Below are positions 1,279 to 51,329 of a stretch of DNA of 64,000 bases, piece by piece (positions within the stretch are counted from its first letter, which is position 1; the number at the start of each line of letters is the position of its first letter). The stretch is from Magallana gigas (lineage: Eukaryota). The position numbers and the translations under genes are program-made. The notes under the pieces are model-generated. The model did not search any database. It saw only the letters and a program-made list of their open reading frames with translations, and was not told the DNA's origin. Location: assembly GCF_963853765.1 (NCBI RefSeq), contig NC_088859.1, forward strand, positions 45,756,001-45,820,000. Reading direction: 5' to 3'.

Positions 1279-4200
1279 GAACAACAGGTATGATAAAGTC
1301 AGCTTAATGGAGTCATAATACAATCTGGACAATGTACATTAATACATGTAGATCCTGTATAAATAAAATCCATTTTTCCCCCTTGGAACTCGGATAGCCC
1401 TGATTGCTGCCAATATTTACAAGAGCAGACTTTAATCACCGCTCCTGCACATATATAGGGACTCAACGTTACGCAGGCAGGGATGACCGCACACCTACGC
1501 AACTCAACAGGTACAAACATTAACGCAAGCAGAGATAACGCAAGCAGGGATGACCGCACACTTGCGCCAACAGCTCAACCTAACGCAGGCGCCGCAATCA
1601 CCACCAATACAAGCAGGTATGACCGCACACTTGTATTAATGCGATACAGGGCAGAAATGACCACACATTCTGTATCGTTGGTTAGAAAAACACGAAGATT
1701 AGATAGACCAGGGATGTTAACACCCTCAATCTCTCCGTACCTGTTCAAGTTTAACCCCAAACAGTCGCTCGGTACAAAGCAATAGACACTGTCCCTATAT
1801 ATGTGCCGGCCTAAAATAATTCATAGTATCTAAAAATTGGAAATCAAAAATAAACAAACTAATCCAGCCTAACCCAAAACTACTTATGCAAAACAACTTA
1901 TATACATTGAATATTTATTATTGTATAAAAATAATCATCACAATAATTGGTTAACAGTGGATGCATTAATTAAAATAATCAAGAATCAATAAATCAAGGG
2001 CAATAACCCAAAACAGTAATACAAAAAGATTCTAATGAAAAAATAGCTGCCTGCTTCAATTTTATAGTCATATCACATGTTGAGTATTGCAGTTCTCAAA
2101 AAGATCCTTTACAATTGTTTATATATGGGATATTTTGCTACATCAAACTCTGAACCTTCTTGTGAGGCCGAAGAATTGTCCTGGAGCCAAAGTCTTAACA
2201 ATTATAAAGAATCATCTTGCTGATTAATTACTGGGGCAGTAAACAAAGGTGAGAAAAAGTCTGTAAATAAAACCCCAGAGACTGACCAAATAAAACAAAA
2301 AAAACTGGTTCAGCTGAATTTAAAGTCGGCGCCTTCATCAGTTAGAAATTTAGTGGTCTCGGACAAAAATCCCCCCAAGAAGCCTAGAACAAGCAGTAGT
2401 GATCAAACCCCAGACGGCGATTCAGACTTCATTACAACAATACAGGATAGTTTAGCAGAAATAAAGGAAACGATGGTGAAAAAATCCGACATTAAAGATA
2501 TAGTGACAGAAATAATAACTGGGCTCAAAAACGAGTTAAAAAAGGAAATAATTTCAGAAATAAAAAAAGATCTCACAAAATCAGTCACTGACCATGTCAA
2601 AACAGAGTTTGAAACCAAAATAGAGAAACAATACAAAGATTTCAACTCCAAAACAAAAGAAATCGAAGAGGGGTTCAATATGGATTTCGAAAGCCTTAAA
2701 GAAAAACTACATTCACAAACACGAGACATCAGAATCCTTCAAAGCTCTCTTAAAGACTGCCAAATAAAATCTGAATCTGCTATTGTCCTTTCAAATCAGA
2801 ATCAACAATATTCACAAAAAAACAACATAAAGTTTGTGAAATGGGCCGAAAAAACTAACGAAAATCTGCGCCATGATCTCTGCCACATTCTCAAGAATGC
2901 GATCAACCTTGACCTGGATCCTACCGATATTCTCGAAATCCACCGTATTCCGAACGGAAACCAGAGAGGACCCAGGCCAGTGATTGCTAAATTTCGAAAT
3001 TCCGAAAGTAAATTGAAGATCATTCGTAACAGGTCCAACAGCGAAATCAAAAAAGTGTTTACAATGCATGACCATTTGACACCAGCAAACGCCAAACTCA
3101 TACGTGATTTAAACAACGATGAACGTATCCAGACCGCATGGTATTATAACGGAAAGGTATTTGCACTTGACGAAGAGGGACAGCGGTACAAATTTGACAT
3201 CATGGACACAGTAAGTGATAAGTTGAAAAAACGGTAATAGCGGAGTCATTGTAAAATCAATTACCTCGGGATCGGTTTGACAAACTGAAAGTAGATCGGG
3301 ATCGGCTTTACCGGAAGTGACATTTACTGTTTACCTGTGTGTATGTGAGATGCTAGTGTGTGAAAGGAAATTAAAGCTAGGTGCGAGAGATTACTGTGTA
3401 TATGTTATTCAATCAGGTAGGGAGTTGCTTGTCTTGTTAATATTTACTGTAAATAATAGGTGATACTTTAAAAATTGCAAGGATTAACTGCCAGGGTTTA
3501 TCTACAATATCAAAGCGTATAGATGTTTTTGAATTTTATAGAAAAAAAGGTTATTCGATTTTATGTTTACAGGACACACATTTTATAACGGAAAGTGAAC
3601 CTATTATAGAATCACAGTGGGGATATCAGTGTATTTTTAACTCTTATAAGTCTAATGCGCGTGGGGTATGCGTATTGTTCAATAATAGTTTTGAGTTTCA
3701 TATCCACAATATTAAAAAAGATGGGGAAGGTAATTTCCTTGCTGTTGATCTTACCATAGAAGAAACCAGGGTTACTTGGTCCAAACTCTGACCAGCCAGG
3801 TTTTTATAAAAATATTAGAAATATATTTTTAGAATTGGATAATGAGTTTTTTATTTTATGTGGAGATTTCAATCTTGTTCTCAATCCAGATATAGATACC
3901 TACAACTATAAGTATATAAACAATCCAAAGGCTAGAGAAAAACTTTTAGAAATTATGGATGATTTGCAGATAGTGGATTACTACAGGGTCTTAAACCCAG
4001 GTAAAAAAATATATACATGGAGAAAAAAAACACCTTTAAAGCAAAGTCGCCTTGATTATATTTTGATTTCAAACAGTCTGTCTAATATAGTAGAAAATTT
4101 TGATATTAAATCAGGCTACAGATCTGACCATTCTATTGTTATTTTAGAACTAAAGTTTAACCCTTTTGAAAGAGGTAGGGGGCTTTGGAAATTTAATAGT

Positions 4201-7200
4201 AGTTTACTGACTGACATGGTTTTCATTGATAAGGTTAAAGAAACTATAGATAGAGTAAAGAGTCAGTATGCATACAATGCTGATATTCATACATTTTTCA
4301 GTAAGGATATAGACGACAGTATATTCCTAGAGGTGCTTCTCATGGAAATAAGGGGTCTTTCTATTTCATACTCATCTCATAAGAAAAAGGAAAGAGAGAA
4401 GATTGAAATCTCCCTAGTTAATGAAATAACATCCTTAGAATCTCAAGAACACATTAATTTTGAACTAATAGAACAAAAAAAATCAAATCTTGAAAATTTA
4501 AGAAAACACAAACTTCAAGGCCATTTCATAAGATCTCGAGCAAGATGGATCGAGCAGGGAGAAAAACCAACAAAATATTTTCTAAATTTGGAGTCTAGGA
4601 ATTTTCTGAACAAAACTATCAAAAAAGTGGAACTTGAAGAAGGGGAAATTATATACAAGCAATCGAATATATTGAATCACGTCAAAGAATTCTATGAAAA
4701 TCTATATACATGTGCTGATTCAGATTTAATAAATATTAACCTTGAAGAAATTATTAAAGTAGATATTCCTAAGTTAGAACCAGATATATCTAGCTCGTTA
4801 GAAGCTGAAATCTCTGAAAAAGAAGTTCTTGAGGTTCTAAAAAATATGAAAAATAACAAATCACCAGGTAGTGATGGTTTTACAGTTGAATTCTTTAAAT
4901 TCTTTTGGAAGGATCTAAAACTTTTTATCTTAAATGCAATCAACCTTATTTTTCTGAAAAAGGAACTTCCTATTTCCCAGAGATTGGGAATTATATCATG
5001 TTTACCAAAAGGTGACAAACCAAGACAGTATTTGAAAAACTGGAGACCCATCACTCTTCTGAATGTTCTCTATAAGCTTATATCAGGATGTATTAGTTAT
5101 CGAATTAAATCTACACTAGACTATATTATATCTGATACACAAACAGGCTTTCTTAAAGGAAGATATATTGGAGAAAATACTAGAATTATTTATGATTTAA
5201 TGTCATTCACTGAAAATGAAAACATACCAGGTCTTTTAGTTCTTATTGACTTTGAGAAAGCCTTCGATTCTGTTTCATGGTCCTTTATATACAAAGCTCT
5301 AGAATACTTTGGATTTGGAAATAATATTATAAATTGGATAAAGATTCTCAACAAAGATTTTAAGGCTTCTGTTTTACAATGTGGCTTCCTGTCAGAACAG
5401 TTTAAAATCCAAAGAGGATGTAGACAGGGTGACCCAGTAGCTCCTTACTTATTTTTGATATGTGCAGAAATTTTATCTATTCTCATAAAACAAAACTTTG
5501 ATATTAGAGGTATAATTGTTAATGGCAATGAACATAAGATTTCTCAGTATGCAGATGATACTTCACTCATCTTAGATGGTTCACCAATGTCACTTTTCGC
5601 AGCTCTTGATACTTTAGAATTTTTTTCACACATTTCAGGTTTGAAGATAAACAGCTCTAAAACAAAAATTGTATGGATAGGTTCTAAAAAATTTTCTAAT
5701 GAAGTTTTTCACCATTCACGTTGGAAACTTGATTGGGGCTCCACTTCTTTTAATTTACTTGGAATAGAATTTTCTGTCGACTTAGATAAAATGACATCAC
5801 TAAATTATAACAAACAACTGCCAAAAGTTTTTTCTCTAATTCAACAATGGAGGAGGAGAATTTTAACTCCCATTGGGCGCATCACGGTTGTAAAAAGTTT
5901 GATTATTCCAAAACTTAACCACCTGTTTATTTCACTTCCAAATCCAATACAAGATGTCATTCTATCTCTTAGTAAGAGCCTGTTCGAATTCATTTGGAAT
6001 TCAAAGTGTGATAAAGTTAAGAGAGAAATTGTTACTCTCGATTACCTAAAGGGTGGTTTAAAAATGGTTAACATTTCTAATTTCATGGCATCTCTTAAAT
6101 GTTCATGGATTAAGAAATTAACTCAAGGCTACAAACCATGGATGGACTTTTTTTTATCAATAAATGGTAATGATTTTGCAAAAAAACTTATTGATTTTGG
6201 TGATGATTTTCTATCATGCATGGTTGTTCAAAGAAACAATACTGTGGAATCATTAGATTTCGTGGTGGCTCAATTTTCGTGGATTTCGTGGGTACCTCTC
6301 ATCCACGAATTCACATCCTCCACGAATAATATATTAAGGTTATAAAGTCATATTTCGTTTTGTAGGTATAAGAAAATACACGAAATTACGTCCCCACGAA
6401 CCTATAAAATTTCAGCAATCCACGAAAATTGGCCCCCACGAAAATTAATGATTCCACAGTATTTTTTGGCAAGATGTTTTTAATTCTTGGCTATGCTATA
6501 CTAAGAAAATGATTAAAAGCTCATTAAATACCAAGAATGTTTTCAATATTCCTGTGTGGTACAACCCAAATATAAAAATTGCATGTAAATATGTATTTAT
6601 CAAAGATTGGTATATGAAAGGGGTTAAAATCATTGGAGATTTTATGAATGAAAATGGAAACATATTGTCAAGAATAGATTTTACTGAAAGATTCCATTTT
6701 TCATATATACCTCCAATGTTATATAATAGTGTTATATGTGCAATATCAAAATACTTGACATATTTGTCTATTGATAAGTCTACTTTGAAGAGAGACTGCA
6801 CTACATTTATGCCATTTTATTATGAGTCTATTTTTTTGAAAGAAAAAGTAACAAAGCATATATACATATGTTTAACCTTAAATGATTGTGTACCTACAGC
6901 TATCAACAAATGGAATGCTGAGCTATGTGATATTTTGCCAAATGATCTCTGTGTACATGATGTTTTTAAAATATGTTTTAGAACTACCAATGATTCAACT
7001 ATTAATTGGTTACAATATAGAATTCTCCATAGAATTCTTCCTGTTAAATATTATCTTAAGAAAATCAGAATTACTACCTCTGACTGCTGTACTTTCTGTA
7101 ATGATATGCCTGAAACTATAAAACATGTTTTTGCAACTTGCAAGAAAATCCAGTCTCTATGGAATGCACTTAGTATACTTATATATGAGAAATGCAACAA

Positions 7201-40300: not shown

Positions 40301-42520
40301 ATCAATGCAAGTTTGGTGAAGTACGGACCAGCAGTAACTTAGATATTACTATCAAAGGGCACCTGCAACAAAAACTTTAACCTGCTCCAAAAACCTTAAC
40401 CTCCTCCAGCATCTGAAACCTATAGCTCAGATTGAGCACTCAAGCCTGTCTGGTGCATCAGTATCATAAGACACACCATCCATGCAAGTTTGGTGAAGTA
40501 TGGACCTGCAGTAACTTAGATATTGCTATCAAAGGGCACCTGCAACAAAAACTTTAACCTGGTCCAACAACCTTAACCTCCTCCAGCATCTGAAATTTAG
40601 GACTCAGATTCAGCATCCAAGTCTTTCAAGTCCATAAGTAGGTCCAGATGCATCATCCATGCAAGTTTGGTGAAGATAGGACAAGTAATAGCTTAGATAC
40701 AGGACCTGCAACAAAAACTTTAACCAGGTTCCGGACGCCGACGCCGAGGGTATAGCATAAGCTCCCCCTGACTTCGTCTCGGTGAGCTAAAAAATGACCA
40801 ACATTCACACAAGTAAACTCATTGCAACAGAATCAACTCACCTGCACTTATATTTTTCTCACTCATTGTTTTCTCAACTGTCTCCACCTTCTCCATAATT
40901 TCGACATAAGTAGTGTTGATATAGATATACATGTAACAGGAAGGTTCCTCAGACACTGTGTGAACTTTGTGGAACTGACCAGGGGGCACCTGCAAAATAC
41001 CCAAAAAATTTAATGTTGACTTCAGCAATGGTAAAAGTGAAACATCAACTGAATGTACATGTATTTATTTCTTTAAAAGAACATCATCATCAAGGGGGGA
41101 TTTGAATCAACATGTCTGTTTGTCCACCTGTCTGTCCAACTTTCATGTCCGATTCAAAACTTTTCTGAGAAGTTACACCAGTAAAGTTGCCTATGACCCA
41201 AGGATGACCCTGATGAGGTCATTGGGCAAGGTTAAGGTCACTCCATTGCATTACTTAAAATATTTAAGTGTCCCAGCTGCTCACCTGAATTTTATCACCT
41301 GGGTTGAGGCTGTAATTCTTTTTTAGCTCCACAAGCTCCACCAAAACACTCCCCGATAGTAAAGTGATGCTAGTGTTCCCAAGATCTTCTTGGATAAAAG
41401 CTTCCAGGTGAAGCCCTGAAGATGGAAATAAAGGGAGACTACTTGTGACTTCAGAGTGTTAAGAGAATACTTTATAATAATATAATTTAAAAGTATGAAT
41501 ACAATAGGTTAACAAACATTTAATGATTTACTGTACTGAATAGGTATTACAAATATATTACCTGGGAAATCTGCCACAAAAACAACATCTGTATAGTTAG
41601 AGGTATCTATCAGCTCCTTTTCCATCTCCTGTAACTTGGATCTCCATGGTGATAAATCAAGTAGCAATGGCATAGCAAAGGAGACCTCTTTAAAGGGGGA
41701 CCACTCCACATCCATTATATTTACTCTGGGGTCAAACATTCTGTCATGTTCAAATGCAAAATTTATTAACACAGTGCCTTTATTTAAGTATACAACCAAG
41801 TCAACTTTACATGATTTGCACTCGTAAAAGTAATGGTAGTTTATACAACATATATACAGGCAACAAAAGAAAAAAAAAATCGTAGGAGACATCAAAACAA
41901 ACCTTTGTTGAAATCTTTTATTCATTGATTTCCAAATGTCAAAATAGAGTTCCACTGACATGTTGTAATTTTTCAAGATGTCTGCCACACAATGTGCATA
42001 CTGGACTACCATGTCTCCATGGCTACTCCATCTTTTTCCAACACTATCAACAAATGCCTATGATAAAATAAAAACAACAAATGTTATTGTTTTTTATAAA
42101 ACTGAACCAACAGTTAAGGTTACTTATACCTGTAAAAGTGCCATCCCATCTGAAATTGTCTTTCTTTGTATATACCTAAAAATTTTCTTTGAAATATCTT
42201 GCCAATTGCAGTGATCTTAAAAAATGTGAGACTTACAGCCGGATCAAGGAACCCTTCTTTTCCTGAGATCTTGTCCTTATAGGAGAGTCGCACATGCTGT
42301 GTTGTCCAGGAATGAACCATCATATCCCAGGAGTAACCATAGAGACCATTGGTCCAGTTGTTGTACCCCTATAACACAGAGTCCCATTCTTACAGTTCTC
42401 TTTTATGTGTTAATAATATGTACAATATATACATGTACCAGTAAAAAACAAGTAGAGGTTACCTAAAAATCAACCATAGTTGTTCCAAAAATCAATAAAA
42501 CACCAAAAAAGCTTGCAACA

Positions 42521-42568
<48 letters not shown>

Positions 42569-45500
42569 CATGCTTACTTGATAATAGATTTAAAATGGTG
42601 ATACACAGGTAGAGAGAAAATGATGATTCATCAAAATTTTACCTTTGTTATTCCATGGGAATATGGCAGGAACAGTTGTATAGCAATATGTATAATGGTA
42701 AATGTGACTCCAAGTCTGTGAACCAGTGAGGGAGAGGTGGGTGGGGCTGATTGGGAGTTAACAGGAACTTTATTATCCTGTGCATAGGGAAAAAAGTTTT
42801 TAAAATAACATGAAATAAAGAAAATAATATAAGAAAAACATACCCAAAGAGTTTGAAACAATAACTTTTCTTTTTATTACATACATGTACATGAAAACTG
42901 AAGATTGTTTAGAATGAAAGTTCAGACTGTTTGGTTTTACAACTATCCTTAATTATCCATAATATGGGTAAGTTATGCACCATTATCATACCAGATTCTC
43001 TCCCTCTGGCTTGATCTCCTCTTTGCTATATAAACAGTGAGAACTGGATTGGATTTCTGTTTCGGTCGAAAACAGAACTCTCAAAAACTTTGGCAGTCTG
43101 GGAATGACTTTCCTTGGCCAATCCACAGCACAGAATAATGGCAGAGTTGCAAGCATGGCATAGGGAAACATTCCTGGAAAAATCATATAGTAATATATTT
43201 TATTATATACCCATCACTTTTCCCTTCTTGATAGTGTCAAGTTTACATCAATATCTATACTTACCTGCATCAACTTTTTGCATTTTCCCCGAGCTGCCTA
43301 CGATCATGCCTGAACTTTTGAGACCACCCCTGTGGTATCATCTAGTGTTTACCCATAATGCACAAGCATACTTCCGTTTCAGTTTTGTTCGGGCATTCGA
43401 GAAGAAAAGCCGCGTGTTTTTCTTCGATTAAAATTTCTTAAGCCTGCGGTCTTAAAATGTCTGATTCATTTAAAATTTGCGTAAAATGTAATAGAGAAAT
43501 GACCGTTTTGGATGACCACGCAGAGTGCTATAGACACAGAGTTTGCAACGAAGCATTTCCATGCGAAGTTTGCAGTAAGTGGTCAGAGGAAAAACGGACG
43601 TTGATCAGAAAGATGATCGAGCGAAAGAAATCTGAAGCGGGGAGAAAGTCAGCTACATTGCCAAATCCAGAAGTTCCCTCTGTGGGGAATAGTGGCAATC
43701 GTTCTGATAGTCAAGTTTCCTCTGCGGGAAACGTAGCTGCGTCAGAAATTCTTTCTCCGACAGAAATGAGTCAAAATGGCGGCGACTTGACGCAGGGTTC
43801 AGTCCCACCTCAAGTAGGTAATTTTCCGCCTTTCGTGTTGGGGAATTTCGAAGCCCAATGGCAGCAATATCAAGAGAATTGCATGAAAAGGTTGATTGAC
43901 GCTAGAATTAAAGAGTTGGTCCAGGATTCGAATAAACAACCGACTATTGCTATTACGTCTGATGTTCGTTCAGACAGGGCGTGTAACAGGTTCGATAGAT
44001 TTCGACCGTCAGATGATCAACGCTCCAGAGAATCGGTTGACGATGATCTGGTAAGCCACAGAGGTGAAACTGATCAAGTCTTAAGCAATTCACTTGATGA
44101 TGTTATTGATGTTCACGAGGATAATCGTTCAGAGTTTGATAACTCTGTCTTGGGTTCAGTACATACGCATGACACAGACTCTAATGGTTCATGCATGGTA
44201 GACTGGAAAAATTTTGTTAAAAAAGTGTCTACAGAACTGAACATCAACTCAGTTGATGCCTCTGAAACTCAGAGCCGAGACTTCAAATCATACATGTCAA
44301 ATCGTTTGATTGGGACAAAATCATCTACCCCACAACAGTCTTTGCCTATGGATGGGTACATTTTAAACACATTAACAGATGTTGATGAAGAATTCCAGCG
44401 AAAAGGTGCGATTCGGACTTATAAAGCATCAGATGATGAAAAATACCGAGTCGCTTCTTCCGACTTTGACAAGTACTGCACAACGCCGCGCCTTGATGAC
44501 AACATTGAGGACAGCAGTTTTACAACAGGGAGAAAAGGAAACAAAAATTCTTATCGTTTCCGCAACCCTATGTTGCATTCACGCAACAATGAGTTATGGA
44601 AGATAGATCAAGGATCTCGACTTCTTCTAAGAGAGTTGACATATGCCTCTCTAATTACGTCCTACGTTGATAACGTTGTATCTGATGAGGACAAGACAGA
44701 GGCCCTACAAGCACTCATGCAGGTGTTCAAGTCAATGGCTGATGTTACTTCCCGCATGTTAGTGGGTGCAGTTGCAGCCCGCAGAGCCATTCACATTGAG
44801 GATTTGGCTTTTAAAAACAAAGCAACTGAAAACAAACTCCTTGTACAGACAACTCTGAATCCTAAGCTCTTTTGTGGGAAGTATTTTGATATTCTTCACG
44901 CAAGTGCAGAAAGTATGCGCGATGCTAAAGAAACACAGCACCTGAGGGGTTCAAAGCAGAGAGATGGTTCAGCCCTCAGCTCTGCAAGGAAAAGAAAGAG
45001 AGATGATTCAGTGGGCACCTCGGAACCGAAAGAACAGCAGTCATCCTTTGCAAAGAAGGGAAAGTTTGCTGCAGAAAAGAATCAAAAGACTACTATAGGA
45101 AGAGGACGAAATTTCAATTCAAGAGGTTCCTTCAGAGGTCAAACTCGTGGCTCTGCACAAGATCGTTTGGGGTTTCGTCCCCCAAAGTAATTTTGACGGA
45201 TCAATTAGAGACTCGACTCGAGTTGCAGAAATCAGCCAAAGTAGGCTGTCGGATCATTTCGTACCACAGGGAGTGGATGAAAATTACATCCGACGATTGG
45301 ATTTTAAAAATAGTCCAGGAAGGACTCAAACTTGTGTTCATAAAACATCCTCCAAATACAGGAGTAAGAATAACAAATGTACAAGATGTCGTCCAAAGAC
45401 AATGTATTTTAGAAGAAATAGAAAGTTTATTAGAAAAGCATGCCATAGAGATTGTTCCCAAGACCCAGGAAGGTCAGGGGTTTTACAGCACCTTTTTTGT

Positions 45501-48500
45501 TGTTCCAAAACGAGACGGAGGTTACCGTCCGATTCTCAATTTGAAACCGTTAAATATATTTCTCCAAAATCAACATTTCAAGATGGAGTCTCTAAGGTCA
45601 GTAATACAGGCTCTGAATGTAGGAGACTGGGTGGCATCAATAGATCTAAAGGATGCATATCTACATGTTCCAATTTATCCAGAAGACAGGAAATACCTCA
45701 GGTTTTGCATAGACAATATCCATTATCAATTCAGGTCAATGCCCTTCGGTCTAGCAACAGCCCCAAGAGTGTTTACGAAATTAATGGGGGCAATAGGTGC
45801 ACATCTAAGAAGTCAACAGATTTCCATTTATATGTACCTGGACGATTGGCTTCTCAAAAATGCAGATCGAATGACATTAGTTCATCAACTAAGGAGAACT
45901 TTGTTTCTGCTGATGGACTTGGGCCTGGTAATAAATCAATCCAAGTCAATTCTGCAGCCAACGCAACAGATAACTTATCTTGGAGCACTATTCAACCTCC
46001 AACAGGGTATGGTCTACCCCAGTTTGGACCGTTTTCTCAGTCTGTTTGGGGCAATTTCTACCATGGTTATGGAATCTTTTATCCCAGCACGTACATTCCT
46101 CAGAATCCTTGGTTTAATGGCAGCCTGTATAGATTTGGTACCTCTTGCCAGACTCAAGATGCGTCCCATTCAGTTCTGCCTTCTGTCCCAGTGGCGTCCA
46201 CATGTGGACGAACTGGATCATCTGATTCAAATGGACAGTTTCCTCATCCCACATCTTCTCTGGTGGATAGAGAGAGGGAATGTTCTGGCAGGAACGTCTA
46301 TTCTGAGCTTCAGAGCAGACCTAACCTTGTGGACGGATGCATCAACTTACGGGTGGGGAGCCCACCTAGAGGATCGCAATGTGTCGGGGAAATGGACGGT
46401 GATAGAACAGTCATCACATATAAATCTGTTGGAACTCAGTGCAGTGGAGAATGCACTTCATCACTTCAGGGACAATGTCAAACACAGGCAAGTCTTGCTG
46501 AGGACAGACAATTCAACAGTAGTGTCTTACATCAATCGCCAAGGGGGGACAAAGTCTGCAGCCCTATGCGTGATGACATGGAGGATTCTGCATTGGTGTC
46601 ACCTTCTCGGGATACAGCTCAAAGCAGCTCACATTCCAGGGAAAAAGAATGTAATAGCGGATCAGTTGTCCAGAGGGCGACAAATTCCCAAGATGACAGA
46701 ATGGAGTCTCAACCAAGAAATAGTTCAGCAGATTTTTCGAGTTTTTCCCACTCCAAACATAGATTTATTCGCAACAAGGGAAAACCGGAAACTAGCAGTG
46801 TTTTGTTCTCCGTTTCCAGACCCCTTGGCATGGGAATGCGATGCGCTAGCTGTAGATTGGACAGGAATGTTTGCATATGCATTTCCGCCTCCCATATTAA
46901 TTCCGAAAGTACTCAGGAAAGTGGAACAGGAGTCGTGTGTTCTTCTCCTCATCGCTCCGTTTTCACCAAGACAGTCATGGTTTCCAGACCTACTACATCT
47001 ATTGGTCGACATTCCAAGGGAACTTCCAATAATAAGAGACATGTTGACTCAAAGAAGAGGGCAGTTCATTCATCCAAGTCCAGAAAGTCTGCATCTGGCG
47101 GTTTGGAAAATTTCAAACAACAAAGAACAGAGAATAGATTTTCTGAGAAAGCTAAGTCATTTATCTTCAACTCACGAAGACAGTCAACAAGAAAAATGTA
47201 TGATGCTAGAATACGAATCTACAAGGAATGGTGTGCCAAGAACCAAAAGGATTCAGTTGAGGCCACTGTAGCTGATTTAGCAGACTTCTTCATCTATTTG
47301 CATGAAGAACGTAGTTGTAAGCCAAATACTTTAATGGGTTATAGGTCAGCGATAGCATCTATGCATAAGGGTTGGAGCAATAGTTCTGTCAGTAACAACA
47401 CTGATCTGTCAAAGTTAATAAAAGGAATATACAATTCTGAACCTAATGTACGACCATTACTTCCAAATTGGGATTTGCCGACTGTTCTTTGGAAGTTGTG
47501 TGACTCCCCATTTGAACCGATGAATTCATGCGATATGAAGTACCTTACATGGAAGACAGTGTTCCTTGTGGCTCTGGCAACAGCATCAAGAGTAAGCGAA
47601 ATTCAAGCTCTTTCAATTGGAGAGTCACATTTACGTCTTGAGCAGAATGGAATACGTTTATTACCAAATATACAGTTTTTAGCCAAAACTCAGAGATTAG
47701 GAAAGCCATGGAAACCAATATTCATACCAGAGTTTAATAGCTTTGCAACAGACAGTAGAGACTTGCTTTTGTGTCCTTGTAGAGCACTTAAAATGTACCT
47801 AAAAAGGACAGAGTCTTCTCGTGGTGATGAAAAGTGTTTATTCTTGACTTACAAATCGGACTCGCAAAAACCAGCATCCAAGAATTCAATTTCAAGATGG
47901 ATTGTGTCACTAGTAAAGTTTGTGTATGAACATAACAGTGAGACCTTATCTCATGTGCGTGCACATGATACAAGACGATTGGCAACTTCATGGGCCCTTT
48001 TCAATGGTGCAACTCTAGAAGAAATTCTACAGACAGCTCATTGGGCAACAGAAAACACCTTTACTTCATTCTATATGAGAGATGTTCCTCAAGGAGAAGC
48101 TCGCTTTGCCAAGTCATCAGTTCTTGATACATCGAGATGGGCAAAAGAAAAAGAACAAAAATAGAATATCTTTTTGGGTGAGTGTATTCTTTATTTTACT
48201 ATTATATGATAGTGATTGTAATCCCGCCCAATATTTCTGCTACAAATTCTGCAAAAAGTTGATGCAGGTAAGTATAGATATTGATGTAAACTGGAGGTTT
48301 TTAAAGGTAAAACCCCTGTTTACGAGATATCTATACTTACCTGCATCACCCACCCCTGTTAATTGGGTCCTAGTTGTGTAGGCCCTCACAAAACTGAAAC
48401 GGAAGTATGCTTGTGCATTATGGGTAAACACTAGATGATACCACAGGGGTGGTCTCAAAAGTTCAGGCATGATCGTAGGCAGCTCGGGGAAAATGCAAAA

Positions 48501-51329: not shown

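What the first reader, a model, noticed from the sequence alone, without database searches (positions are those of the whole stretch)
43241..48560. Intact, probably recently active DIRS1 retrotransposon with a complete, readable ITR/ICR circle-junction blueprint
Seen in the sequence: all three ORFs are free of stops, the two 138-bp ITRs show no mismatch by eye, and the ICR matches both termini. The ICR predicts the circular intermediate junction CCTCC-A-GTTTAC. The empty site reconstructs as GTGTCA-A-TTTTAGAG, so crossover falls at a shared A before (G/T)TTTA with no TSD. Established: DIRS1 elements integrate via a YR-recombined circle and carry a Dam-like methylase domain of unclear function. 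Inference: this is a young, possibly polymorphic, autonomous copy.
Basis: partly seen in the sequence, partly recalled or inferred. Interest (0 to 1): 0.72.

Follow-up and report, generated by a model that had tools for sequence, protein, structure and literature searches.

The report
Young active DIRS1 retrotransposon in oyster
This is an intact, recently inserted copy of a known kind of jumping gene (a DIRS1-type retrotransposon that uses a tyrosine recombinase); other oysters still carry the empty site, so the family is moving now, but the element itself is an ordinary member of its group.

Summary
Window 43241-48560 is a 5320-bp DIRS1-like element. It has two 138-bp ITRs with no mismatch and an ICR (48250-48348) that is exactly complementary to both termini. 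All three long reading frames are open.

The insertion is polymorphic. Contigs of two unrelated DNA runs join 43239/43240 directly to 48560/48561. Seven paralogous copies of the host repeat read straight through the site. There is no target-site duplication.

The genome, an oyster according to earlier notes of this scan, holds at least seven full-length copies that differ by 0.08-0.6 %. Poly(A) RNA covers the family at low depth.

From 21 left and 20 right flanks the target is T-N-A^N-T-T-T-(A/C), which mimics the circle junction CCA^GTTTAC. The exchange point lies outside the shared T-run.

The recombinase frame stays stop-free across all of pol, against about 35 stops expected. In metagenomic relatives this frame continues the gag frame, either fused or behind a single stop. 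That suggests a Gag-spacer-recombinase product.

The scan earlier found a protein-less DIRS1-type element elsewhere in this genome (s1-395822).

Verdict: a new member of a known kind. It is a useful natural data set for DIRS integration and expression.

The parts
43241..48560 (+). Whole DIRS1-like element, 5320 bp, inserted without target-site duplication
   Evidence: Boundaries are fixed three ways: by the empty-allele contigs, by the paralogous uninterrupted sites, and by 20 other copies with the same ends.
43241..43250 (+). Left terminal 10 nt (GTTTACATCA), outside the perfect ITR but copied in the ICR
   Evidence: The letters are the same in 20 of 21 left ends.
43251..43388 (+). Left ITR, conserved part, 138 nt
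   Evidence: 0 mismatches to the right ITR.
43457..45190 (+). ORF1, gag-like, 577 aa, with an N-terminal Cys/His-rich motif and an RG-rich tail
   Evidence: No Pfam hit. Nearest Atlas clusters are 'Putative GAG protein' and LAP2alpha-like at 0.88-0.90. The N-terminus is homologous to the first ORF of relative L043.
45007..47271 (+). pol frame: RT, RNase H and a C-terminal Dam-like segment. First ATG at 45277; -1 relative to ORF1.
   Evidence: Pfam RVT_1 E 4e-21 and RT_RNaseH E 1e-6. Dam PF05869 E 0.012 on 46690-47268, below the cut-off.
45099..48164 (+). Long recombinase frame, -1 relative to pol and +1 relative to ORF1. About 690 spacer codons overlap pol, followed by the YR domain.
   Evidence: 0 stops against 34.7 +/- 4.0 in 5000 synonymous shuffles. 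More than 100 database clusters of 920-1000 aa align end to end.
47178..48161 (+). Tyrosine recombinase domain (SAM-like N-domain plus catalytic domain) with R138, K170, H263, R266, W289 and Y299. Catalytic codons lie between 47589 and 48074.
   Evidence: Pfam Phage_integrase E 9e-6 and Phage_int_SAM_4 E 3e-4. The catalytic residues are conserved in 9 aligned relatives.
45179..45190 (+). A run of five C, then AAAG, then the ORF1 stop TAA. It ends the only stretch (45099-45187) where all three frames are open. Candidate recoding site.
   Evidence: Read from the sequence; function is inferred only.
48250..48291 (+). Left ICR, reverse complement of 43241-43282
   Evidence: 42/42.
48292..48348 (+). 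Right ICR, reverse complement of 48504-48560
   Evidence: 57/57.
48388..48525 (+). Right ITR, conserved part, 138 nt
48526..48560 (+). Right extension, 35 nt, ending CCTCCA; copied in the ICR
   Evidence: All 20 right ends finish with ...CA, 19 of them with CCTCCA.
43184..43240 (.). Left part of the MITE-like host repeat that received the insertion
   Evidence: Matches many genomic copies at 82-97 %. Contiguous with the right part in the paralogs.
48561..48888 (.). Right part of the same host repeat
   Evidence: 62 matches at 76-86 %.
42992..43173 (-). Coding exon of a vitamin-K-dependent gamma-carboxylase-like host gene. Its splice acceptor lies 67 bp from the insertion point.
   Evidence: Pfam HTTM and VKGC_lumenal hits on neighbouring exons. 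Exon borders come from the sequence and from spliced RNA reads ending at 42991.

Best explanation
Window 43241-48560 is a full-length, recently inserted and still polymorphic copy of an active DIRS1-like (tyrosine-recombinase) retrotransposon family. It sits antisense in an intron of a gamma-carboxylase-like gene.

Likely cycle, with the status of each step:
1. A genome-length RNA is made. Shown only as low-level poly(A) RNA over the whole family.
2. ORF1 (gag-like), pol (RT, RNase H, Dam-like) and the recombinase are translated from three mutually shifted frames. All three frames are open together only at the end of ORF1. The route is inferred.
3. The RNA is reverse-transcribed, and the ICR acts as a splint that brings the two cDNA ends together to give the junction CCTCCA|GTTTAC. 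This is inferred from the exact complementarity and from the Dictyostelium experiment showing that the ICR is essential.
4. The recombinase exchanges strands between this junction and a genomic site that resembles it, T-N-A^N-T-T-T-(A/C). The exchange falls exactly between the A and the next base, so no duplication or loss results. The end product is shown; the enzymology is inferred.
For: - Anatomy. Catalytic recombinase residues.
- Family: at least seven full-length copies differ by 4-31 substitutions per 5.3 kb, and six of them have identical ITRs. Five copies keep all three frames open.
- Polymorphism: empty-allele contigs occur in both DNA runs laid. In X2 the flanks show no other difference over about 490 nt.
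- RNA: depth is 1-6 over the whole element in a poly(A) library. Six RNA-run assemblies from three studies hold 82-87 % of the words.
- Target: A at -1 in 14/21 (p 0.0025). T at +2, +3 and +4 in 16, 15 and 18 of 20 (p 1e-5 to 1e-7). A or C at +5 in 16/20.
- Junction mimicry: sites match the circle junction at 5.1 of 12 positions on average, against 3.0 for random sites; no resample of random sites reached the observed mean.
- Ends: all left ends start GTTTAC and all right ends finish CA.
- Literature: the ICR is essential and the intermediates are single-stranded cDNA (PMC7192593). The general DIRS1 anatomy, including NTT termini and long ORF overlaps, is described (PMC3266345).
Against: - No transcript start or end, circle junction or protein was observed here.
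- RNA depth is low, and at five diagnostic positions every read carries the letter of other copies. This copy's own expression is therefore not shown.
- The Dam-like domain scores below Pfam's threshold, and ORF1 has no family hit.
- Only two other samples were examined, so the allele frequency is unknown.
- The organism's identity rests on earlier scan notes, on run labels ('oyster metagenome') and on a Pinctada protein among the nearest relatives.
Confidence: 0.9

Rival explanations
1. The family is active, but this copy is a passive passenger. It does not itself produce RNA or protein and would move only with enzymes supplied in trans, or never again.
For: - The copy and its sister L002 form a two-member sub-lineage marked by five shared letters, and the window copy has one private ORF1 change (V for D at codon 194).
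- All RNA reads and all collapsed DNA contigs of the other samples carry the alternative letters.
- It lies antisense in an intron, 67 bp from an exon.
Against: - All frames are open and the catalytic residues are intact.
- The RNA samples probably lack this insertion altogether, so they cannot report on it.
- The existence of L002, only 4 substitutions away at another locus, shows that this sub-lineage transposed very recently.
Confidence: 0.25
2. Integration follows the classical model. A double-stranded circle recombines within a 3-bp sequence identical in element and target (here GTT), with two staggered strand exchanges.
For: - This is the published comparative model (PMC3266345; discussed in PMC7192593).
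- The element starts with GTT, and targets are T-rich at the matching positions.
Against: - Only 2 of 20 right flanks begin GTT. Position +1 is T in 12, A in 5 and G in 3.
- The shared TTT lies wholly to one side of the switch from flank to element.
- A staggered exchange across a non-identical overlap should leave target letters in the left end, or element letters in the flank, in about half of the insertions. None of 21 left ends and none of 20 right flanks shows this.
- This pattern fits a single point of exchange, as expected if only one donor strand takes part (inference).
Confidence: 0.3
3. The copies arose by segmental duplication or by assembly error, not by transposition.
For: Near-identity of the copies alone would allow it.
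Against: - Every copy has different flanks right up to the same first and last letters.
- The exact empty site exists in other individuals and in the paralogs.
- Other samples carry element-flank junctions that are not among the flanks retrieved from this assembly (loose ends).
Confidence: 0.01

Closest known systems
Vertebrate-type DIRS1-like elements such as GaDIRS1 (stickleback) and the DrDIRS1 group, as tabulated in PMC3266345
   Same: - Size: 5322 bp there, 5320 bp here.
- GTT start with AAC in the ICR junction.
- A long conserved ITR (148 vs 138 nt) with a short divergent terminal part.
- A right extension of about 26-35 nt.
- ICR halves of 46 and 56 nt there, 42 and 57 nt here.
- A long overlap of the recombinase and pol frames.
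   Different: - The host is a bivalve.
- The nearest proteins I could name come from a pearl oyster (44 % identity), so nothing points to transfer from fish.
- No tree was built because no named fish sequences could be obtained with the tools.
Mollusc DIRS1-like elements described so far (AcaDIRS1/2 of Aplysia, LgDIRS1-3 of Lottia; PMC3266345)
   Same: Same superfamily and the same set of parts: gag-like ORF, RT/RH/MT, recombinase, ITRs, ICR and right extension.
   Different: - Those elements start with ATT or AAT.
- Most have short conserved ITRs (31-36 nt).
- They were reported to have no long ORF overlap.
- This element starts with GTT, has 138-nt ITRs and has a 2.1-kb overlap.
Dictyostelium discoideum DIRS-1, the founding and only experimentally studied member (PMC7192593, PMC3950715)
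   Same: - Three overlapping ORFs on one RNA.
- ITRs.
- An ICR complementary to both termini.
- No target-site duplication.
- Non-autonomous derivatives that can be served in trans.
   Different: - DIRS-1 has non-identical ITRs.
- DIRS-1 inserts mainly into other DIRS-1 copies at centromeres.
- Here the insertions are dispersed, lie next to a T-run, and sit in introns and repeats.
Single-strand donors of bacterial tyrosine recombinases (integron cassettes at attC, CTX phage). This is an analogy only, from general knowledge.
   Same: - A folded single strand supplies a double-stranded recombination site.
- Only one strand is exchanged, and replication resolves the product, giving a single sharp exchange point.
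- The DIRS ICR paired to both cDNA ends would make such a site.
   Different: - No homology is claimed.
- Nothing was tested here beyond the junction pattern.
- DIRS elements are eukaryotic retroelements.

Membership tests
DIRS1-like superfamily (order DIRS) | Encodes a tyrosine recombinase instead of a DDE integrase | tested here: met
   Pfam Phage_integrase E 9e-6 and the SAM-like N-domain E 3e-4, both just under the curated cut-offs. R, K, H-x-x-R, W and Y are all present and conserved in 9 relatives. 9915 database relatives. No integrase or protease family hit in any ORF.
DIRS1-like superfamily (order DIRS) | Reverse transcriptase and RNase H of the Ty3/gypsy type in one ORF | tested here: met
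   RVT_1 E 4e-21 (76 bits against a cut-off of 29.6) and RT_RNaseH E 1e-6 (29.2 against 24.8). The Y-L-D-D motif is visible in the translation.
DIRS1-like superfamily (order DIRS) | Dam-like methyltransferase domain after RNase H; this separates DIRS1-like from Ngaro and VIPER | tested here: inconclusive
   PF05869 Dam scores E 0.012 and 15.7 bits against a cut-off of 28.1, on 46690-47268, covering profile positions 12-104 of 169. No structure was predicted.
DIRS1-like superfamily (order DIRS) | Inverted terminal repeats | tested here: met
   138 nt, 100 %.
DIRS1-like superfamily (order DIRS) | Internal complementary region made of two adjoining halves complementary to the left end and to the right end with its extension | tested here: met
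   42/42 and 57/57. A 22-nt block is shared by both ITRs and both ICR halves (D3/I4), as described in PMC3266345.
DIRS1-like superfamily (order DIRS) | Insertion without target-site duplication | tested here: met
   Empty alleles and seven paralogous sites.
DIRS1-like superfamily (order DIRS) | The same NTT trinucleotide at the start of the element and just after its end, complementary to the ICR junction | tested here: inconclusive
   The start is GTT and the ICR junction is AAC. The flank after the right end is GTT in only 2 of 20 copies. The constant feature is T at +2 to +4.
DIRS1-like superfamily (order DIRS) | Gag-like first ORF | tested here: inconclusive
   No Pfam hit. Atlas leads to 'Putative GAG protein' and LAP2alpha-like clusters at 0.88-0.90. 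LAP2alpha domains are reported in Xenopus DIRS ORF1 (PMC9210276).
Ngaro / PAT-like elements | Split direct repeats instead of ITRs plus ICR | tested here: not met
   The only long repeats are inverted.
Crypton DNA transposons | Tyrosine recombinase without reverse transcriptase | tested here: not met
   RT and RNase H are present.

The most novel reading that the evidence does not exclude
In this DIRS1 clade the recombinase is not started at its own ATG. It is made as a C-terminal extension of Gag, through a spacer of about 650 codons that has to stay stop-free while overlapping pol. This would explain the long-noted but unexplained 'long ORF overlap'.

Evidence:
- The frame is open from the very end of gag in every element examined.
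- In four metagenomic lineages it is the gag frame itself, behind a single TAG or TGA (L044/L051, L045, L048, also L050) or with no stop at all (L043, 1626 aa; also protein P0126).
- In the window it is +1 of gag, with all three frames open only in the 89 nt before the gag stop.
- The first ATG of the frame lies 24-206 codons in, downstream of conserved sequence.

A second reading that the data do not exclude: integration is a one-strand, one-point exchange from a folded single-stranded cDNA.
Probability: 0.3. Interest if true: 0.6.

Novelty: new member of a known kind. Interest (0 to 1): 0.38.

Why it matters
DIRS elements are the least understood order of retrotransposons. Only one member has ever been mobilised experimentally. 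The recombinase's specificity has never been tested, the circle junction has never been recovered, and nobody knows how the two downstream ORFs are translated from the single RNA (PMC7192593, PMC3950715).

This oyster family is young enough that ends, flanks and empty sites can be read without noise.
- It gives a base-resolution picture of where the exchange falls: next to a T-run, not inside it.
- It shows that the long recombinase frame is under strong selection to stay open.
- With its relatives, it suggests that this frame continues gag.
- For oyster genetics it is a segregating 5.3-kb insertion 67 bp from a splice acceptor of a gamma-carboxylase-like gene.

Tried and rejected
- **Relatives' DNA context.** A metagenome scan replaced it.
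- **Other DIRS1 families of this genome.** The other families, at 57 %, 45 % and 32-37 % pol identity and many with open pol frames, could not be cut out and checked for the frame arrangement.
- The analysis was redone by reference.
- **Solved structures.** A PDB sequence search with the recombinase domain gave nothing at E <= 1.
- **Related loci.** The search for related loci with the first alignment had no usable conserved stretch. A closer alignment worked.
- **Earlier findings by sequence.** The search of earlier findings with the ITR was blank.
- **Diverged copies.** L024, L025, L027, L029 and L030 (78-90 %) are too decayed to inform on frame conservation.
- **-1 slippage into pol.** The heptamer C CCA AAG at the gag stop was considered. 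The RNA downstream folds only modestly better than shuffles (z -2.3). In the relatives pol is +1 of gag with no common slippery motif. This is kept only as a possibility.
- **Transfer from fish.** Considered because of the likeness to GaDIRS1. Not supported, since the nearest named relative is a pearl oyster protein.
- **Copy number from depth.** Element words are more than ten times deeper than the flanks, but the tool warns that summed contig depth is no copy number, so no number is claimed.
Full report
**1. The observation**

A repeat search over 42500-49500 finds inverted arms at 43251-43394 and 48382-48525, plus two shorter inverted pairs that tie an internal stretch (48250-48348) to both ends.

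Exact comparison gives the following.
- The ITRs are 138 nt each (43251-43388 and 48388-48525) with no mismatch.
- 48250-48291 is the perfect reverse complement of the first 42 nt of the element (43241-43282).
- 48292-48348 is the perfect reverse complement of the last 57 nt (48504-48560).
- A 22-nt block is common to both ITRs and both ICR halves, as described for the superfamily (PMC3266345).
- The window has no N.

**2. Coding content**

Three frames are used.

*ORF1* (43457-45190, 577 aa) has no Pfam match.
- A protein-language-model search places it next to clusters named 'Putative GAG protein' and a LAP2alpha-like cluster, at 0.88-0.90. This is a lead only.
- LAP2alpha domains are reported in ORF1 of Xenopus DIRS families (PMC9210276).

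*The pol frame* (open 45007-47271) carries three parts.
- RT: E 4e-21.
- RNase H: E 1e-6.
- A last segment of 193 residues with a sub-threshold match to the phage Dam methylase family: E 0.012.

*The third frame* (open 45099-48164) carries a tyrosine recombinase only in its last 328 residues.
- The Arg, Lys, His-x-x-Arg, Trp and Tyr of the active site are all present and conserved in nine relatives.
- No protease or DDE integrase is found.

**3. The long overlap is selected**

The recombinase frame runs through the whole pol ORF without a stop.
- Shuffling synonymous codons of pol gives 34.7 +/- 4.0 stops in that frame, with a minimum of 17 in 5000 shuffles.
- The other alternative frame has 65 stops.
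- None of the 168 pol codons that precede a codon starting AA, AG or GA ends in T.
- An exhaustive protein search finds 9915 relatives of the 1005-aa product. More than a hundred 50 %-identity clusters of 920-1000 aa align end to end.
- The overlapping part aligns collinearly at 23-33 % identity (E 1e-26 to 1e-80). The recombinase part aligns at 36-63 %.
- The conserved blocks of the spacer sit over conserved blocks of RT (inspection). Its sequence similarity may therefore be a by-product of pol, but its openness is not.

Long overlaps are known in about half of DIRS1-like families, and were reported as absent in the five mollusc elements examined in 2011 (PMC3266345). This oyster family, and a relative with a Pinctada member, show that they do occur in molluscs.

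**4. Family, age and polymorphism**

The window is C7:45756001-45820000 of a 564-Mb, 29-contig assembly. Earlier notes of this scan call the organism an oyster. Run labels and the nearest named protein agree.

Copies in the assembly:
- Seven full-length copies are 99.3-100 % identical to the window's, and three more are 96-97 % identical. There are many fragments and internal-deletion derivatives.
- Pairwise differences among the seven are 4-31 substitutions in 5.3 kb.
- Six of them have identical ITRs. The 96-97 % copies have 3-4 ITR mismatches and broken frames.
- Of the seven, five keep all three frames as in the window. One has an extra stop upstream of the first pol ATG, and one has a 1-bp insertion.

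Reads laid on 42901-48900 from four public runs:
- Both DNA runs, from different studies, contain a contig that joins 43239 to 48560. It skips 5320 bases, and one letter fits either side.
- In X2 that contig accounts for all the flank depth and shows no other difference from the window's flanks.
- No contig in either run bridges this flank into the element.
- The insertion is therefore absent from at least one haplotype in two of two other samples.
- Loose ends in these runs show element-flank junctions that are not among the 20 flanks I retrieved from this assembly.

RNA:
- Poly(A) RNA covers the whole element at depth 1-6.
- At the five positions that mark the window copy and its sister L002, every read has the other letter. 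Expression is shown for the family, not for this copy.
- Six RNA-run assemblies from three studies hold 82-87 % of the sampled words.

**5. Site of insertion**

- The last 57 nt of the left flank and the first 328 nt of the right flank belong to one MITE-like repeat with hundreds of copies.
- In seven paralogs the two parts abut and read ...TGTCAATTTTA....
- The element lies antisense in an intron of a vitamin-K-dependent gamma-carboxylase-like gene on the minus strand.
- It sits 67 bp upstream, in gene orientation, of the acceptor of the coding exon 42992-43173. The other border of that exon is confirmed by spliced RNA reads.

**6. Target choice and exchange point**

I collected 21 independent left flanks and 20 right flanks.
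- All left ends begin GTTTAC (one has a 4-nt insertion behind it), and all right ends finish CA.
- The base before the element is A in 14/21 (p 0.0025), and T is frequent at -3 (13/21).
- After the element, +1 is T in 12, A in 5, G in 3 and never C.
- +2, +3 and +4 are T in 16, 15 and 18 of 20 (p 1e-5 to 1e-7).
- +5 is A or C in 16/20.
- Complete sites match the circle junction at 5.1 of 12 positions, against 3.0 at random. No resample reached the observed mean.

T-rich or NTT termini are known for the superfamily (PMC3266345, PMC9210276).

What the clean data add is the position of the switch.
- The right end always keeps the element's A and is followed by the target's own +1 base.
- The left end always keeps the element's G, whatever the target had.
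- Both junctions therefore switch between -1 and +1, outside the shared T-run.
- Only 2 of 20 flanks repeat the element's GTT.

Two staggered exchanges across a non-identical overlap should leave 'mixed' junctions in about half of the insertions. None is seen. I take this as a pointer, by inference and not demonstration, to an exchange that involves a single donor strand. That would fit the single-stranded cDNA found in Dictyostelium (PMC7192593) and a double-stranded site made by the ICR pairing with both cDNA ends.

**7. How the recombinase frame is reached**

A scan of metagenome contigs gave 28 related loci.
- In L044, L045, L048, L051 and L050 the gag-like ORF and the long recombinase ORF are in the same frame, separated by one TAG or TGA.
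- In L043 they form one 1626-aa frame. L043 is the nearest relative, at 43 %. It has the same Cys/His motif at the start of ORF1, and its terminal nucleotides are nearly the same as the window's.
- Protein P0126 (1349 aa) is a similar fusion.
- In all of them pol sits in the +1 frame of gag, and its -1 frame is stop-free: 0-1 stops against 26-38 expected.
- The first ATG of the recombinase frame lies 24-206 codons in.

In the window the arrangement differs.
- Gag is frame 2, pol is -1 of it, and the recombinase frame is +1 of it.
- All three frames are open together only in 45099-45187. That stretch ends in five C, AAAG and the TAA stop.
- Sequence conserved with the relatives (W-G-F-V-P-Q-S, 45168-45188) lies upstream of the first ATG at 45402.

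The simplest common reading is that the recombinase is made as an extension of Gag: by direct fusion, by stop readthrough or, here, by a +1 shift. That would be why the spacer frame must stay open. I found no statement of this in the open literature I could search, but the founding papers are not in the library. It remains a hypothesis (about 0.3). How pol is reached is not explained by it.

**8. Comparison and verdict**

The element passes every structural test of the DIRS1-like superfamily. Three features were inconclusive: the methylase-like domain and the gag-like ORF have only weak support, and the strict 'same trinucleotide at both ends' rule is met by only 2 of 20 copies.
- In anatomy it is closest to the GTT-type elements of fishes, such as GaDIRS1 (PMC3266345).
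- It differs from the gastropod elements described so far.
- Its nearest sequence relatives are bivalve.
- The scan has already reported a protein-less DIRS1-type element elsewhere in this genome (s1-395822). I could not test whether the present family supplies its enzymes.

It is a new, well-preserved and currently mobile member of a known kind. It is ordinary in type and useful as material.

**9. Limits**

- Only one read-laying run was available.
- No copy is singled out for functional revival.

Noticed in passing
window 41509-42012(-), 42631-42861(-), 42992-43173(-), 48899-49123(-): Exons of a vitamin-K-dependent gamma-carboxylase-like gene (HTTM and lumenal domains). The DIRS element lies antisense in its intron, 67 bp from a splice acceptor, so the polymorphic insertion could affect splicing.
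   Followed up: partly
window 43184-43240 and 48561-48888: MITE-like repeat of about 370-385 bp with an internal inverted part and hundreds of genomic copies at 76-97 % identity. It is the direct target of this insertion.
   Followed up: partly
L015 (G000:C1:38416647-38422865): A truncated copy whose left ITR is followed outward by the reverse complement of the right extension instead of the normal 10-nt left end. It is an element with two 'right-type' ends, possibly a snap-back or inter-element recombination product.
   Followed up: no
L021, L022/L023, L032: Internal-deletion derivatives that keep both ends and the ICR: element positions 1-268 joined to 3691-5320, 1-1340 joined to 3700-5320, and a 635-bp mini-element (1-319 joined to 5005-5320). 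Run X12 holds a further variant that skips 44610-45727.
   Followed up: partly
G000, places listed: Many other DIRS1-like lineages with uninterrupted pol frames. They include one at 45 % identity with four equally scoring copies, two at 57-58 %, and dozens at 32-37 %. The first look found 1959 candidates.
   Followed up: no
L043:1192-1236 and 6399-6443: The metagenomic relative L043 shares about 30 identical nucleotides at the start of the ITR and the same A|GTTTA junction with the window's element, although its proteins are only about 43 % identical. The terminal sequence is far more conserved than the coding sequence.
   Followed up: partly
L034 (G000:C3:35764181-35764706): A copy with a 4-nt insertion (AATT) directly behind the first six letters of the left end.
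   Followed up: no
window 53446-53865(+): An ORF with a CARD (caspase recruitment) domain, E 1e-10.
   Followed up: no
window 48177, 48291 and 48561 (loose ends in RNA runs X21 and X23): RNA reads that run from the element into flanks of other copies, meaning read-through or chimeric transcripts at other insertion sites. Reads ending at 48291 are left ends of other copies aligned to the ICR.
   Followed up: no
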